Assembly: GCF_052425735.1 (NCBI RefSeq)
Contig: NC_135767.1
Location: 18,786,001 to 18,850,000, forward strand
DNA: 64,000 bases
Direction of reading: 5' to 3'
From: Oculina patagonica
Lineage: Eukaryota
Position numbers and translations under genes: made by a program. The notes under the pieces are model-generated. The model was given only the letters and a program-made list of their open reading frames with translations. It was not told the DNA's origin and did no database searches. Positions 125-63,605 of this stretch are shown here, one piece after another; within the stretch, counting starts at the first letter, position 1, and each line of letters begins with the position of its first letter.

Positions 125-2205
125 ATGCTGATGACAATTGCAATCTTCTACCTTCTCCAAACAATAAACACAAAAGCTGAAGAACGTCTACAAGCTGTCT
201 TCAAAACAAAAAACAACTCTGTTCTATTTGATGAAATTCCTATTTCTGAAATCAGATCAGATTCACTGATGTCCTGTTCACAGCGATGTGCCAGAGACAA
301 ACGTTGTAATAGTGCTAACTTTATACAAAGCCAAAGGATGTGCTCTCTACTAAACAAAACACGGAAAACTCATCCACGGCTCTTTGTGAAACAAGCTAAT
401 GTTATTCACCTGGAAAAGGTACAGTTAGAACTCGCTAAAATCGAAAAACAATGGTCAAGTCCTAAATGGGCTTTTAGTCAATCGAAACAAAGTAAAAAAA
501 TAATAATAATAAAAAACGAAACAACAGAAATACTGAGTTTTTTTTTAGAGCTAAACAGTGATGGTTTTATTATTTTCGATGGAATTATCGTGAATCGTGT
601 AACAACGAAAGTGTTTTAAAACCTGTTTAACCTGAACTTTTAAATCGACTATAAATCCAGAAATAAATTCACTACACAAGAGCTATTTCGGCCTTTCGCC
701 GAAAATCAGGGTTTCTTATTATACGCGCTTGTTACTGTAAGTTATACTATCTAATTCTAAAAATATACAATGTTATGTTTCTTCATATAACAATTTTATT
801 GCTGTATGCTATGGCTGTTTCGTTAAATCACCATTATCAAAATTTTTGTATTTCCTTATTATTTGGTAAATGGTTATTGTTTATTCCAAAAATTAAGTTT
901 GTTTTAATTTTTCCGCAGATGAATGCAGAGCTTGGTAAGTTTAGCTAAAATTGTTTAATCACTATCACTAGTGATAATCATAATCATAATCATACAATTA
1001 TTTAGACAGATGGTCCATTTCAATCTAGGTTGTTAAATTATCAACCCAAGCAAGATATATAAAAACATTATATTAACATTAAATTGAAAAATTAAATAAA
1101 TAATTTAGTACGATGAAATTGTTCTACGGCTCGAATATTACACTTCTTCTTCTTCTAGTAGTACTGCTCTACTCATCCTCTTTTATTGATGCGGTGTTCA
1201 TGTAGACAGATGATCTCGGAGAGTCATTAAGAGTGAAATAATGTTTAAATGAAGTAAATGAAGAAGTGTTCTCAAGTTGAAATCTCGGAAAAAAGATTTT
1301 CCGAGTACCCCCAACGGGAGTCGAACCCATGACCTTCCAAGATTACCGGTTGGACGCTCTAACCACTGAGCTATGGGAGACTCGTGGTGAGCGAGGTCAT
1401 ATTCTAGGTTCTTATGAGTGACACATGTCCTGCTAACTGCAAGGCTCAATATGTCGAAATGAATGTGGATAAATGTAAAGTGAATTATCCAAGTTGCCAT
1501 TTCACTTTACATTTATCCACATTCATTTCGACATATTGAGCCTTGCAGTTAGCAGGACATGTGTCACTCATAAGAACCTAGAATATGACCTCGCTCACCA
1601 CGAGTCTCCCATAGCTCAGTGGTTAGAGCGTCCAACCGGTAATCTTGGAAGGTCATGGGTTCGACTCCCGTTGGGGGTACTCGGAAAATCTTTTTTCCGA
1701 GATTTCAACTTGAGAACACTTCTTCATTTACTTCACTTTATCCAAGTTGCCATTTCACTTTACATTTAATGTTTAAATGTTACAACCTATAATGTTTGTC
1801 GCTATCTTGTTTGTGTGGTTGCCCCTAGATAAATAAATGAACAAATAAATAAATAAATAAATGAATAAATAAAGAAAGAAGTAATTAAATAAAAACAAGT
1901 AAACGAATAAGTAAATGAATAAGTAAATAAATAAAGAAATTAAAATTACGAATAATAAAGTTCTCAATGTTCCTGTATTTTTCCTATCATTTCTTCTATT
2001 TGGGTAATATTCAACGTTGACGACAAAAGTTGAGTGTTTGCAGAAGACAACGGACGGCAAATGTTGCAGCATTCCATTCACTTACAAAGGGGTAAAGTAC
2101 TATTCCTGCACTACGCTTGATCACCACAGACACTGGTGTTCTCTGGATTCTATATTCAATGGAACATGGGGAGATTGTGACTACTCTGTTGTGTATAATG
2201 GATAA
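125..2205 (+). CDS. Gene 1: secreted PAN/Apple + fibronectin type II (FN2) protein; exons 125-418, 919-934, ~2030-2205 (an upstream exon may lie outside the window)
   Basis: CAG|ATG at 125; PAN motif CSQRC-x5-CNSANF-x6-CSL; donor AAG|GT at 418/419; microexon gcag|ATGAATGCAGAGCTTG|gtaag (MNAELG, phase 1). The downstream ORF has the FN2 signature CCSIPFTYKGVKYYSCTTLDHHRHWCSLDSIFNGTWGDC. The first AG after the pyrimidine tract (2028-2029) is in frame but is a weak AAG acceptor. Confidence 0.7.
1250..1768. mobile_element. Inverted dimer of a tRNA-containing SINE-like element (two ~235-bp arms, 16-bp spacer)
   Basis: 1250-1484 is the reverse complement of 1501-1735; Pol III A box TAGCTCAGTGG (1612-1622) and B box GGTTCGACTCC (1658-1668); flanked by direct repeat TAATGTTTAAATG (1239-1251, 1767-1779). 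Confidence 0.8.
1828..1935 (+). repeat. Degenerate (AAAT)n microsatellite
   Basis: aaataaatgaacaaataaataaataaataa... read directly. Confidence 0.8.
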
Positions 2206-2308
2206 ATCATATCGCCCTTTTAATCGAGTTCTCACCTTTTGCCGGTAAGAAACATTTGTGATCACTGTCACACAAAATCTTAATTTCAAGTTCTTCATTT
2301 TGAAGTCA

Positions 2309-61793: not shown

Positions 61794-63605
61794 ATGTTGC
61801 TGGCTACAGTTGTATTTATGTTGTCCTTGGCGGCAAAGATAAAAACAGACGAACATGGTGTTTTCTTCAAAATTGAAGAAAACTCTTTTCTTTTTCATGA
61901 AAACGCTTTTTGGAATGGAAAGGCAGACTCCTTAATGTCTTGTTCACAGATGTGTGCGAGGCAAGATGCTTGTAAAAGTGCAAATTTTATAGCAAGCCAA
62001 GGGACCTGCTCACTTCTCACTGATATTCAAACAAAGCAGTCAAAAAGGCTTTTAAAACAAGACGGTTCTTTTTATTTGGAAAAGGTTTGTTATCACTTAA
62101 TTTCTTGTCAGATCTCTATATGTAGGCCACTACATTTGACTTAATGCCTGATATTTGACAACTGTCTGGCATTAATTAAAACGAACTTAAAAGTGTCCTC
62201 GCTATTTCCATGCTTCTTAAAAAAATGTATTGACTCTCATGTAGCTTTCCCCAATTCAGGAATATGATTAATTAAATTAACTGTATAAAAACGTTTTCGT
62301 GTTTTGGTATTGACCTGTCGTAGCATAAAGCTTATATTAAAGCGCTAAACGTAAACACTTCTGCAAGAGTAATTTTTTTTTCATCCTAGAAACCAAGGAA
62401 AAGAAATATCAGTGCTCAAAGTTCTCTTTTTCACTGGTTTAAAATTTTTAAATTTTTAAAACACTCTTTTATCACTTTAATTATCGACTTGTCAGTTTTT
62501 TGGTGTTTGTTTCCTTGTATGTCTTCTTTTTTTTTTTGAGGGGGGGGGGATGTCACTTCTCTCTAATATTTATTTCAAGTTTTCCTGAATTAGTATCATT
62601 CATTTTAAAGGTTGTCTCTCCTGGAATTCCAAATTCACCGGGTAAGTAATGTTACTTTTTAGTTAAGAAGTTTAGGGGTCGATAGTACTTAATTTTGGTA
62701 TAATAACGCTTTGGATATTATTAAGCGATAATAACTAATGATAAAAGCACACAAACCAACACCCAATCAATAATTTGTCTCTGTTGGAAAATTAAAATTG
62801 GTGAGTGGGGTGGTAAATATGGCTGATCTAGTTTATAATTTTAACGATAAAAGGTGTACATTTAGTAACAGTGGTAAAATTGTAAAATATTTCAATATTT
62901 TGGGTCATGTTCATGAAAACCAATGATTAAAAATGTCTTATTCACGTAGGCAACACTCGATTTTCAGCGGTGCCCTCGTGCCAGGCCCTACACAGTCAAT
63001 CTTCTTTTCCTTCCTCGGGTGTTTATTGGATTGATCCTGATGGTGGGACCCAGACAAACGCCTTCAGGGCTTACTGTGATATGGACACTGATGGAGGAGG
63101 TTGGACCCTAGTATATAGCTATACATTCACAAATTATGTTCATTTTCAAGATAACTCGAACGCGATCACACCAAGACCAAATTGGCCAGCAGTCTCTAAA
63201 GTAGATGTTCCCGTCTCGACAACTCCTCCCCTGAACGAAACAGACTACAACGCCATAAACTTCTCGCAGTGGAAACAACTTGGCAGAGAGATCCTGATCA
63301 AAAGCAATATAAACAACTGGCTGATATGCCATCCGGGAACTGGAAGTTTGGTTGATTGGCAGGACGGAAACATCAGCTGTCGTGTTACTAAACACGTGAC
63401 GGATACGTGTAACGGAACTGCGCCGCCTTGGGACTTTAAATCGAGTAATGCCTATGGGCCGAGATTCAGGACTTCTGCTAATTACTATTATTTTGATGGA
63501 TACACAAGGAAAAACTGGCCAACTCATGATCCTTGTGGAAAAAATGCGGGAAATCATGTGAAAAATGTGATTGATCCACATGGGAACATTTTTATCCGAG
63601 CATAA
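61794..63605 (+). CDS. Gene 10: divergent-subfamily PAN/Apple + fibrinogen-related-like protein; exons 61794-62084, 62611-62641, 62950-63605 (upstream exon ends 61660)
   Basis: CAG|ATG, AAG|GT, 31-nt linker exon VVSPGIPNSPG, cacgtag| acceptor; paralog of gene 9. Confidence 0.85.

What the first reader, a model, noticed from the sequence alone, without database searches (positions are those of the whole stretch)
125..63605. Tandem array of ten secreted PAN/Apple + fibrinogen-like genes: candidate diversified recognition repertoire
Seen: ten paralogs with the same exon plan and intron phases, no premature stops in the modelled exons, and a hydrophobic N-terminus with no transmembrane segment. 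Established: PAN/Apple domains bind proteins and glycans; FReD proteins (ficolins, tachylectin-5, snail FREPs) and intelectins are expanded innate recognition lectins. Inference: this is a lineage-expanded family of soluble recognition proteins (immunity, symbiont or self recognition) with an architecture I cannot match to a named family.
Basis: partly seen in the sequence, partly recalled or inferred. Interest (0 to 1): 0.9.

Follow-up and report, generated by a model that had tools for sequence, protein, structure and literature searches.

The report
Coral PAN plus fibrinogen-like gene array
A stretch of a stony-coral (Oculina patagonica) chromosome carries nine intact copies and one broken copy of a gene for a small secreted protein that joins a PAN/Apple module to an atypical fibrinogen-like module. 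The family is real, uncharacterised and probably made of extracellular binding proteins, but an immune "recognition repertoire" role is not shown.

Summary
The window (Oculina patagonica, 100% identical to annotated proteins) holds ten PAN exons but only nine complete genes. g1 is a fragment that lacks the large last exon, and g2 lies on the minus strand. All nine share one plan: an optional 18-nt coding 5' exon, a signal-peptide+PAN exon, a 16- or 31-nt microexon and one exon for the whole C-terminal domain, with GT-AG sites and no internal stops. The array continues outside the window (at least 4 more gene models, not all of them intact).

PAN is solid. The C-terminal domain is not a canonical fibrinogen-related domain (FReD). 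Sequence profiles match only its first ~48 residues. A confident AlphaFold model hits only FReD-superfamily and intelectin structures, at borderline TM 0.4-0.5. This PAN-plus-domain architecture is found across Anthozoa. The nearest full-length relatives outside animals (40-51% identity) are Myxococcota surface proteins.

Selection is purifying overall (omega ~0.3). One loop-rich patch evolves neutrally on average (omega ~1.0 in the recent clade, not significantly above 1).

Verdict: an uncharacterised, tandemly expanded family of secreted binding-type proteins. Immune recognition remains conjecture. Moderate interest.

The parts
125..934 (+). g1: truncated copy. Signal-peptide+PAN exon 125-418 and 16-nt microexon 919-934 only; the last exon is absent. 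Gene fragment or pseudogene.
   Evidence: PAN_1 E 1.2e-10. The microexon has cgcag|...|gtaagt sites. No C-domain remnant in 935-5526, and DNA homology to paralogs ends at about 939.
5527..7864 (-). g2: complete gene on the minus strand. Exons 7864-7577, 6708-6693, 6182-5527; 319 aa.
   Evidence: The spliced model is identical to NCBI protein P0007, LOC144628766. Mirror-image duplicate of g3.
17602..19337 (+). g3: complete gene. Exons 17602-17889, 18225-18240, 18682-19337; 319 aa.
   Evidence: Intact ORF with GT-AG sites.
21660..25807 (+). g4: complete gene. Exons 21660-21677, 24257-24547, 24806-24821, 25155-25807; 325 aa.
   Evidence: Identical to P0001, LOC144667318. Used for both AlphaFold models.
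25598..25729 (+). Hypervariable patch of the C-terminal domain in g4 (residues 257-300). The equivalent stretch exists in every copy.
   Evidence: omega 0.81 against 0.34 elsewhere in independent pairs, Fisher p=0.001. ML omega 0.64 against 0.30 in 11 genes, and 1.04 against 0.345 in the recent clade. Highest column entropy in both the animal and the bacterial homologs.
29792..32744 (+). g5: complete gene. Exons 29792-29809, 31183-31473, 31793-31808, 32092-32744; 325 aa.
   Evidence: Identical to P0002, ACROYT_G034082.
34350..37871 (+). g6: complete gene. Exons 34350-34367, 35263-35553, 36903-36918, 37219-37871; 325 aa. Odd cysteine count, and HDRCG in place of HDPCG.
   Evidence: Identical to P0003, G034083. 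Cysteines and motifs.
40364..43951 (+). g7: complete gene. Exons 40364-40381, 42165-42455, 42734-42749, 43299-43951; 325 aa.
   Evidence: Identical to P0004, G034084.
46236..50564 (+). g8: complete gene. Exons 46236-46253, 48831-49121, 49368-49383, 49909-50564; 326 aa.
   Evidence: Intact ORF. It matches P0006 (G034085) apart from the 5' exon.
57851..59435 (+). g9: complete gene of the second, older subfamily. Exons 57851-58141, 58536-58566 (31 nt), 58765-59435; 330 aa.
   Evidence: Identical to P0048, LOC144627970. It sits in a clade with Montipora, Pocillopora and Stylophora proteins, SH-aLRT 98.
61794..63605 (+). g10: complete gene of the second subfamily. Exons 61794-62084, 62611-62641 (31 nt), 62950-63605; 325 aa.
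   Evidence: Intact ORF. The partial NCBI model P0029 (G034088) maps here.

Best explanation
The window is part of a tandem cluster of Oculina patagonica genes: nine intact genes and one fragment here, and at least four more gene models just outside. The genes arose by whole-unit duplication, including one inverted duplication.

Each gene encodes a ~300-residue secreted soluble protein: a signal peptide, one PAN/Apple domain, a short linker encoded by a microexon, and a ~205-residue cysteine-rich C-terminal domain encoded by a single exon.

That domain is a distinct, unnamed branch of the fibrinogen-related fold superfamily. It keeps the N-terminal 'C...YC[DE]M.TDGGGWTL' subdomain shared with FReDs, intelectins and collagen C-propeptides. 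The rest is its own, with signatures NAVTPRPxWP, KSNINNW, WPTHDPCG and a C-terminal ...G.I..R.

Inferred mechanism: the proteins act outside the cell as binding (lectin-like or adhesive) molecules. The conserved core and the WPTHDPCG motif would form the invariant part of a site. The adjacent loop-rich, disulfide-stapled segment (residues ~257-300) lies, by topology, where the ligand-binding P subdomain of FReDs lies. It carries the differences between paralogs and so would tune what each copy binds. PAN would supply a second protein- or glycan-binding surface.

Shown: the genes, their intactness and splice plan, the domain identities, the fold class, the phyletic spread and the selection pattern. 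Inferred: secretion, binding, the location of the site, and any role in microbe, symbiont or matrix recognition.
For: - Ten PAN exons and nine C-domain exons. Nine intact spliced ORFs, six of them identical to NCBI models.
- Shared intron and flank homology of 72-89% between units shows whole-unit duplication.
- PAN_1 scores 34.7-45.7 bits in the seven ORFs scanned, all with a PAN exon, against a cutoff of 21.4.
- Hydrophobic N-terminus only, with no second hydrophobic segment. The first 25 residues have pLDDT below 60.
- The C-domain model has pLDDT 95.1 and pTM 0.92. All top 50 listed Foldseek PDB hits are FReD-superfamily or intelectin chains, probability 0.99-1.0: tenascin-C TM 0.49/0.50, intelectin-1 TMq 0.48, ficolins and tachylectin-5A ~0.42.
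- Purifying selection overall (omega 0.30-0.35), so the genes are functional. The patch at residues 257-300 has omega 0.64 across 11 genes and 1.04 in the recent clade. It is also the most variable segment family-wide and sits next to the most conserved motif.
- Bacterial homologs place the same domain between Laminin_G_3 and CBM_4_9 carbohydrate-binding modules in large surface proteins.
- A 59%-identical coral homolog sits on an intronless 1178-nt metatranscriptome contig that includes the microexon-encoded linker, so the splice plan is used in vivo.
- Neighbouring locus tags suggest similar clusters in Desmophyllum and Stylophora.
Against: - There are no binding, localisation or expression data for these loci.
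- The FReD Ca2+/acetyl-pocket motifs (NCA, GWW[YF], NLNG, recalled from memory) are absent. A ficolin-like sugar site therefore cannot be assumed.
- Fold similarity is borderline (TM at most 0.50, rmsd 7-9 A).
- omega in the patch is not above 1 (likelihood difference 0.013 against omega=1). The same region is also variable in bacteria, so relaxed constraint on surface loops explains it equally well.
- The patch boundaries were chosen after looking at the alignment.
Confidence: 0.55

Rival explanations
1. Structural or regulatory components of extracellular matrix, mucus or the skeletal organic matrix, rather than recognition molecules. The two domains would cross-link matrix glycans and proteins, and the copies would differ mainly in dosage or in place of expression.
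For: - Corallium rubrum skeletome protein CR_6 (687 aa) is annotated COLFI+Fibrinogen_C with no G-X-Y repeats and is ranked third to fourth in the two sclerite matrix fractions. It yields the peptide EIGEEILIK|S at 582-590, which is the family's G.EILIKS motif at the right distance from the C-terminus.
- The Oculina skeletal proteome lists one PF00147-only 'ficolin-1-like' protein.
- Other family members carry EGF/EGF_CA modules typical of matrix proteins.
- Mostly purifying selection.
Against: - CR_6 could not be aligned, because its sequence is truncated in the stored supplement, so its membership is unverified.
- No PAN-containing protein appears in the Oculina skeleton list.
- Nematostella and Exaiptasia, which have no skeleton, also have the family.
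Confidence: 0.2
2. Cnidocyte or gland-cell secretory products (capsule, adhesive or venom-associated components).
For: [quoted passage not shown] The proteins here are small, secreted, cysteine-rich and tandemly duplicated, which is a common pattern for such products.
Against: That paper's FREPs were not shown to be this sub-family (one search gave no mapping). There is no similarity to any known toxin family in Pfam, NCBIfam or PDB.
Confidence: 0.1
3. The C-terminal domain is an enzyme (for example a glycan-modifying activity using the invariant His-Asp of WPTHDPCG), not a binding module.
For: H, D and C in WPTHDPCG are nearly invariant from bacteria to corals. The bacterial homologs sit beside CBM_4_9 modules, which often accompany catalytic domains.
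Against: Every structural neighbour is a non-catalytic binding domain. No hydrolase or transferase family is detected. g6 tolerates HDRCG.
Confidence: 0.07
4. A decaying array of non-functional duplicates, with no biological role for most copies.
For: g1 is truncated. Just outside the window, one copy has a deletion in PAN (P0008) and one annotated model of the minus-strand copy has an aberrant C-terminus (P0056). g6 has an unpaired cysteine.
Against: Nine of ten copies have intact ORFs and splice sites despite dS of 0.24-0.8 between them, and omega is 0.3-0.5.
Confidence: 0.04

Closest known systems
Canonical fibrinogen-related domain (FReD) lectins: ficolins, tachylectin-5A, FIBCD1, mollusc FREPs; also tenascin and angiopoietin FReDs
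   Same: Secreted proteins with a C-terminal ~200-220 residue globular domain. They share the N-terminal Cys...YCDM.TDGGGWT subdomain and the same fold class by Foldseek (probability 1.0, TM 0.40-0.50). The loop-rich region before the last strand is the variable part. Tandem gene expansion is common in invertebrates.
   Different: Only ~35-48 residues align to the family profile, with 13-16% identity over the structural alignment. The Ca2+/acetyl-pocket motifs are absent. There is no collagen-like, coiled-coil or IgSF oligomerisation region, and PAN takes that position. The family has its own signature motifs (NAVTPRPxWP, WPTHDPCG).
Intelectins / X-type lectins (human ITLN-1, Xenopus XEEL, lamprey serum lectin)
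   Same: These give the best sequence-profile hits (7e1e 1.6e-10, XEEL 2.4e-10) and are among the top structural hits. They share the 'GGGWTLV' continuation. They are also FReD-derived domains with a remodelled ligand-binding half.
   Different: The match covers only the first 48 residues. Intelectin domains are ~280 residues against ~205 here (TMt 0.35-0.40). The intelectin Ca2+/diol-binding region has no counterpart that I could detect.
NCBIfam NF040941 'fibrinogen-like YCDxxxxGGGW domain' proteins of bacteria, especially Myxococcota LamG_3-[domain]-CBM_4_9 surface proteins
   Same: The window proteins pass the NF040941 cutoff (49.6-68.5 bits against 30). Eleven GTDB Myxococcota or 'Deltaproteobacteria' MAG loci and about 45 environmental clusters share the whole ~205-residue domain at 40-51% identity, including every signature motif.
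   Different: NF040941 models only the 46-residue N-terminal piece. The bacterial proteins are 600-4300 residues long with LamG, Big_2, CBM_4_9 and TSP3 modules and no PAN. Bacterial and animal domains fall on opposite sides of one branch, SH-aLRT 98.
Fibrillar collagen C-propeptide (COLFI, PF01410)
   Same: Pfam COLFI scores above threshold on profile positions ~32-70. This is why a Stylophora family member is auto-named 'collagen alpha-2(I) chain-like'.
   Different: There is no triple-helix repeat and no match beyond ~40 residues. The collagen name is an annotation artefact, as PMC7853314 argues for CR_6.
PAN/Apple-domain proteins (plasminogen/HGF N domain, apicomplexan microneme proteins, nematode PAN proteins)
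   Same: One PAN_1 domain with a four-cysteine core. There is weak similarity to the Eimeria MIC5 apple domain.
   Different: A single PAN fused to a FReD-like domain. I found no described protein with this pairing.

Membership tests
PAN/Apple (Pfam PF00024 PAN_1) | Profile match above the curated gathering score | tested here: met
   34.7-45.7 bits against a cutoff of 21.4 in the five PAN ORFs scanned (g1, g2, g4, g10 among them). All ten PAN exons are mutually alignable.
PAN/Apple (Pfam PF00024 PAN_1) | Conserved cysteine core (two disulfides) | tested here: met
   Four cysteines at conserved spacing (SCSQxC...C...C) in all ten copies. Disulfide pairing was not determined.
Canonical FReD (Pfam PF00147 Fibrinogen_C) | Profile match over the whole ~220-residue domain | tested here: not met
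   Only profile positions 14-47 of 221 align (24.8-30.4 bits). A family profile aligns only positions 3-50 to every solved FReD.
Canonical FReD (Pfam PF00147 Fibrinogen_C) | FReD three-dimensional fold (A, B and P subdomains) | tested here: inconclusive
   Every listed hit (top 50) is a FReD-superfamily or intelectin chain with probability 0.99-1.0, but TM is 0.40-0.50 and rmsd 7-9 A. The core is shared. The equivalence of the P region is inferred from topology only.
Canonical FReD (Pfam PF00147 Fibrinogen_C) | Ca2+ site and acetyl-group pocket motifs in the P subdomain (D.D..., NCA, GWW[YF], NLNG; motif list recalled from memory) | tested here: not met
   A regex scan of all ten products found no NCA, GWW[YF] or NLNG. 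A single D.D.D occurs, in g10 only.
Canonical FReD (Pfam PF00147 Fibrinogen_C) | N-terminal subdomain with Cys...YC[DE]M.TDGGGWT | tested here: met
   Present in all nine complete copies. It is the region matched by Pfam, NCBIfam and PDB profiles.
Intelectin / X-type lectin | Full-length similarity to the ~280-residue intelectin domain | tested here: not met
   Sequence match limited to 48 residues. TM normalised to the target is 0.35-0.40.
Intelectin / X-type lectin | Ca2+-coordinated exocyclic-diol binding residues | not tested
   No residue-level structural alignment was available, because coordinates are not exported.
NCBIfam NF040941 GGGWT_bact domain | Profile match above the curated cutoff | tested here: met
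   49.6 bits (g4 product) and 68.5 bits (g9 product) against a cutoff of 30. The model covers only 46 residues.
Unnamed 'GGGWT...WPTHDPCG' full-length domain family (Anthozoa, Owenia, Myxococcota) | End-to-end alignment with the conserved NAVTPRPxWP, KSNINNW-like and WPTHDPCG motifs and the terminal G.I..R | tested here: met
   In the 15-sequence alignment A2 of bacterial and anthozoan domains, mean column identity is 48% with 19 invariant columns. 213 full-length domains were recovered by a profile.
Diversified immune FREP-type repertoire (e.g. Biomphalaria FREPs) | IgSF + FReD architecture | tested here: not met
   No Ig domain is present. The architecture is PAN + FReD-like domain.
Diversified immune FREP-type repertoire (e.g. 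Biomphalaria FREPs) | Positive or diversifying selection on the recognition surface | tested here: inconclusive
   The patch has omega 0.64 (11 genes) and 1.04 (recent clade), not different from 1. Site-level tests were not possible.
Diversified immune FREP-type repertoire (e.g. Biomphalaria FREPs) | Induction by microbes or parasites, and binding to them | not testable with these tools
   No expression or binding data can be reached for these loci.

The most novel reading that the evidence does not exclude
The ~205-residue C-terminal module is not an ordinary vertically inherited animal FReD. It moved between Myxococcota-like bacteria and an early anthozoan or other marine eukaryote, in an unresolved direction. 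In Anthozoa it was joined as a single phase-1 exon to PAN, EGF and other modules, founding a large cnidarian family of secreted binding proteins.

For this reading:
- Coral-to-bacterium identity (40-51%) equals coral-to-Nematostella identity.
- The branch separating the bacterial and animal sets is short.
- The distribution is patchy. Among the members that carry an organism name the family is found in Anthozoa, one annelid (Owenia) and Myxococcota; most other hits are unnamed. An amoebozoan (Phalansterium) has only repeats of the N-terminal ~50-residue piece.
- The whole domain sits in one exon.
Probability: 0.35. Interest if true: 0.65.

Novelty: new variant of a known kind. Interest (0 to 1): 0.45.

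Why it matters
Corals depend on telling symbionts, commensals and pathogens apart and on building a glycan-rich matrix, yet most of their secreted binding proteins are unnamed.

This work defines a large anthozoan family (939 proteins found with one coral copy; 126 clusters at E below 1e-30 across all life). Databases currently split it between 'uncharacterized', 'fibrinogen C-terminal domain-containing', 'Apple domain-containing' and, wrongly, 'collagen alpha-2(I)-like'.

It shows that the C-terminal module is a separate branch of the fibrinogen-like fold, with its own signature motifs and a defined variable patch. That gives concrete constructs and residues to test.

The near-identical module in myxobacterial surface proteins raises a testable case of inter-domain transfer of an extracellular binding module.

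If the paralogs bind different glycans or microbes, the array would be a simple germline-encoded recognition set in an early-branching animal. If not, it is one more matrix protein family.

Tried and rejected
- I looked for the missing last exon of g1 on both strands with tblastn at E 10 and blastn against paralog units. Nothing was found. The idea that an inversion carried it beyond g2 was rejected, because no extra minus-strand C-domain exon exists.
- Pfam on ten intergenic ORFs of at least 90 aa gave no hits.
- Rfam on the window gave only the two tRNA-like hits.
- Seven literature searches found no description of the family: PAN/apple + fibrinogen + coral, skeletal matrix, cnidarian FReD, and six locus names ((malformed term)).
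- I tried to tie the family to skeleton proteomes. Stylophora P14 and P18 'collagens' are not this family, according to PMC7853314. Corallium CR_6 is a plausible member but could not be aligned, because its sequence is truncated in the stored supplement. The Oculina skeletal list has one PF00147-only protein and no PAN protein.
- A search seeded with a long family member (P0143) did not recover CR_6's reported best hits.
- A search with the Owenia protein found no other named non-cnidarian animal homolog.
- The look-up of encoding contigs had no record for P0029, so the right flank of the array was not seen.
- The reading 'canonical ficolin-like lectin' was rejected on the membership tests.
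- The reading 'collagen' was rejected, because there are no G-X-Y repeats and only a 40-residue COLFI match.

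
Full report
**Source and reality of the array.** The window is AT-rich (GC 31-42%) intron-bearing eukaryotic DNA. The g4 product is 100% identical to 'uncharacterized protein LOC144667318 [Oculina patagonica]' on a 23.46-Mb chromosome-scale contig. tblastn with one PAN peptide and one C-terminal peptide finds ten PAN exons (starting at 125, 7864 on the minus strand, 17602, 24257, 31183, 35263, 42165, 48831, 57851 and 61794). It finds nine C-terminal exons, with E-values down to 1e-145. 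There are no N runs in the window.

**Gene models.** Donor and acceptor inspection, guided by annotated proteins, shows one plan.
- The exon that starts right after a CAG acceptor encodes the hydrophobic leader and PAN (288-294 nt) and ends in phase 0 at ...LEK|GT.
- A microexon follows, 16 nt (INSDL, VNPKP or VNLKP) in g1-g8 and 31 nt in g9 and g10.
- A final 653-671 nt exon begins in phase 1 after ...gtag| and encodes the entire C-terminal domain and the stop.
- g4-g8 also have an upstream exon with six codons (MT[QH]Q[ILV]E) 0.9-2.6 kb away.

Assembled, g2-g10 give 319-330 aa ORFs without internal stops. Six equal NCBI proteins exactly.

g1 has only the PAN exon and the microexon. Its homology to paralogs stops at about 939, and no trace of the last exon exists before g2. 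So the count is nine genes plus a fragment, and g2 is inverted. Units share intron and flank homology of 72-89%, and g2 and g3 are mirror images, so duplication was of whole units. To the left of the window a fetched locus carries three more copies, and consecutive locus tags imply at least one further copy. One of these has a deletion inside PAN, and one model has an aberrant C-terminus.

**The protein.** Pfam PAN_1 is clearly present. The only hydrophobic stretch is the 10-14 residue N-terminal core, and the maximum elsewhere is 0.94 on a 19-residue Kyte-Doolittle scale. AlphaFold gives pLDDT below 60 for residues 1-25 and above 90 for the rest, with pTM 0.82. I read this as a cleaved signal peptide and a soluble secreted product. 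No signal-peptide predictor was available, so this is an inference.

**What the C-terminal domain is.** Pfam Fibrinogen_C and COLFI, NCBIfam NF040941 and every solved FReD, intelectin or collagen C-propeptide sequence align only to the first ~35-48 residues. The remaining ~160 residues match no curated family. A domain-only AlphaFold model is very confident (pLDDT 95.1, pTM 0.92). Against the PDB its listed hits are all FReD-superfamily or intelectin chains (tenascin-C, intelectin-1, XEEL, FIBCD1, ficolins, tachylectin-5A, angiopoietins). Probability is 0.99-1.0, but TM is 0.40-0.50, rmsd 7-9 A and identity 13-16% (the full-length model agrees). FReD P-subdomain motifs, as I recall them, are absent. 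I therefore file the domain as a separate branch of the FReD-like fold, not as a member of PF00147 or of the intelectins.

**Relatives.**
- One coral copy finds 939 proteins, mostly scleractinian. Neighbouring locus tags suggest clusters in Desmophyllum and Stylophora.
- An exhaustive search finds 2232 clusters at 50% identity with E at or below 1e-3, and 126 with E at or below 1e-30.
- Named animal members come from Scleractinia, Exaiptasia, Nematostella, the octocorals Dendronephthya and Xenia, and one annelid, Owenia. A search with the Owenia protein found no other named non-cnidarian animal.
- PAN plus this domain occurs in Nematostella and Dendronephthya, so the architecture predates the hexacoral-octocoral split. 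EGF-, PAN+EGF- and PF23283-linked versions also exist.
- The whole domain, with every signature motif, also occurs at 40-51% identity in 600-4300 residue bacterial proteins with Laminin_G_3, Big_2, CBM_4_9 and TSP3 modules. These come from Myxococcota or 'Deltaproteobacteria' MAGs, one on a 1.87-Mb contig.
- In a 114-row tree the 22 known bacterial rows, with 25 unlabelled rows, and the animal rows fall on two sides of one branch (SH-aLRT 98). That branch is short (~0.2) compared with the terminal branches. The pattern suggests inter-domain transfer, but the direction cannot be read from an unrooted tree.
- Within the window, g9 and g10 belong to an old subfamily with Montipora, Pocillopora and Stylophora members. 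g2-g8 form a second subfamily, and g4-g7 are an Oculina-specific burst.

**Selection.**
- Pairwise dN/dS is 0.27-0.53 within subfamilies.
- ML codon models on 11 genes give omega 0.35 overall, 0.29 for PAN, 0.29 for the C-domain core and 0.64 for residues 257-300.
- In the recent clade the patch has omega 1.04 against 0.345 elsewhere, and fixing omega at 1 costs 0.013 log-likelihood units.
- Four phylogenetically independent pairs give 0.81 against 0.34 (Fisher p=0.001, region chosen post hoc).
- The patch is also the most variable segment in animal and bacterial homologs and abuts the most conserved motif, WPTHDPCG. It includes an optional disulfide that is absent in g9 and g10 and half-lost in g6.

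Selection is therefore not uniform, but diversifying selection is not demonstrated.

**Expression and function.** A 59%-identical coral homolog lies on an intronless 1178-nt metatranscriptome contig and includes the microexon-encoded linker. No paper in the searchable library treats the family. Two contextual leads exist. Nematostella FREPs are expressed in mature cnidocytes. Corallium rubrum skeletome protein CR_6 has the same domain annotation, lacks G-X-Y repeats, and yields the peptide EIGEEILIK|S at the expected position, which suggests it is a family member. That membership is unverified.

**Conclusion.** This is a real, tandemly expanded, uncharacterised family of secreted PAN + atypical FReD-like proteins. 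The most likely mechanism is extracellular binding, with paralog differences concentrated in one loop patch (confidence 0.55). Immune or symbiont recognition, matrix function and cnidocyte products all remain open. The distinct domain branch and its myxobacterial twins make it moderately interesting.

Noticed in passing
window 1247-1738: A perfect 238-nt palindrome (arms 1247-1484 and 1501-1738, 100% complementary, 16-nt spacer). Each arm carries an intronless tRNA-Tyr(GTA)-like sequence (1305-1380 minus, 1605-1680 plus; Rfam tRNA 50.5 bits). It lies just after the point where g1 loses homology to its paralogs. It is either a very recent inverted duplication or an assembly artefact.
   Followed up: partly
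window 53873-54815: An interstitial telomere-like tract, (TTAGGG)n-type, ~35 units at 53873-54066. It is followed directly by a 65-bp satellite of 11 copies at 54075-54815. Both sit in the 7.3-kb gap that separates the g2-g8 subfamily block from the g9-g10 block.
   Followed up: no
window 10187-11117 and 13056-13995: A 940-bp inverted repeat at 97.6% identity inside the 9.7-kb head-to-head spacer between g2 (minus) and g3 (plus). It is much younger than the g2/g3 duplication (78-82% DNA identity). It is probably two copies of a mobile element or the terminal repeats of one.
   Followed up: no
window 23355-23690 and 23879-24212: A 340-bp inverted repeat at 88% identity inside intron 1 of g4, ending about 45 bp upstream of the PAN exon.
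   Followed up: no
window 37219-37871 (g6) and 58765-59435, 62950-63605 (g9, g10): The cysteine pattern varies in the variable patch. g2-g5, g7 and g8 have an extra pair (C273/C293 in g4 numbering). g9 and g10 lack both. g6 keeps only the second and also has HDRCG instead of the near-invariant HDPCG. That leaves a free cysteine, which could allow covalent dimers or could be a sign of decay.
   Followed up: partly
L082:1-24060 (CM126644.1 18760593-18784652, left of the window): Three further family genes. P0008 has an intact ORF but a deletion that removes part of the PAN cysteine core. One annotated model (P0056) of the minus-strand copy ends in an unrelated C-terminus instead of WPTHDPCG...NIFIR; the gene called there in the locus gives a different 319-aa product. 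No microexon was found in that copy with my pattern.
   Followed up: partly
L001-L011 (GTDB Myxococcota / 'Deltaproteobacteria' MAG contigs): Bacterial surface proteins (LamG_3, Big_2, CBM_4_9, TSP3) carry the same full-length domain at 40-51% identity to the coral one. About 70 other bacterial and archaeal loci share only the ~50-residue N-terminal GGGWT piece.
   Followed up: partly
P0122 (Phalansterium solitarium transcript, 3103 aa) and P0124, P0127, P0141, P0176: Giant proteins with 9-15 tandem copies of only the ~50-residue N-terminal subdomain (query positions ~11-60). This suggests that the piece can exist as an independent repeat module.
   Followed up: no
literature: PMC7853314 (Corallium rubrum skeletome), protein CR_6: An abundant sclerite-matrix protein annotated COLFI+Fibrinogen_C without collagen repeats. 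It yields the peptide EIGEEILIK|S at residues 582-590 of 687, which matches this family's G.EILIKS motif at the expected distance from the C-terminus. It may be a family member with a matrix role.
   Followed up: partly
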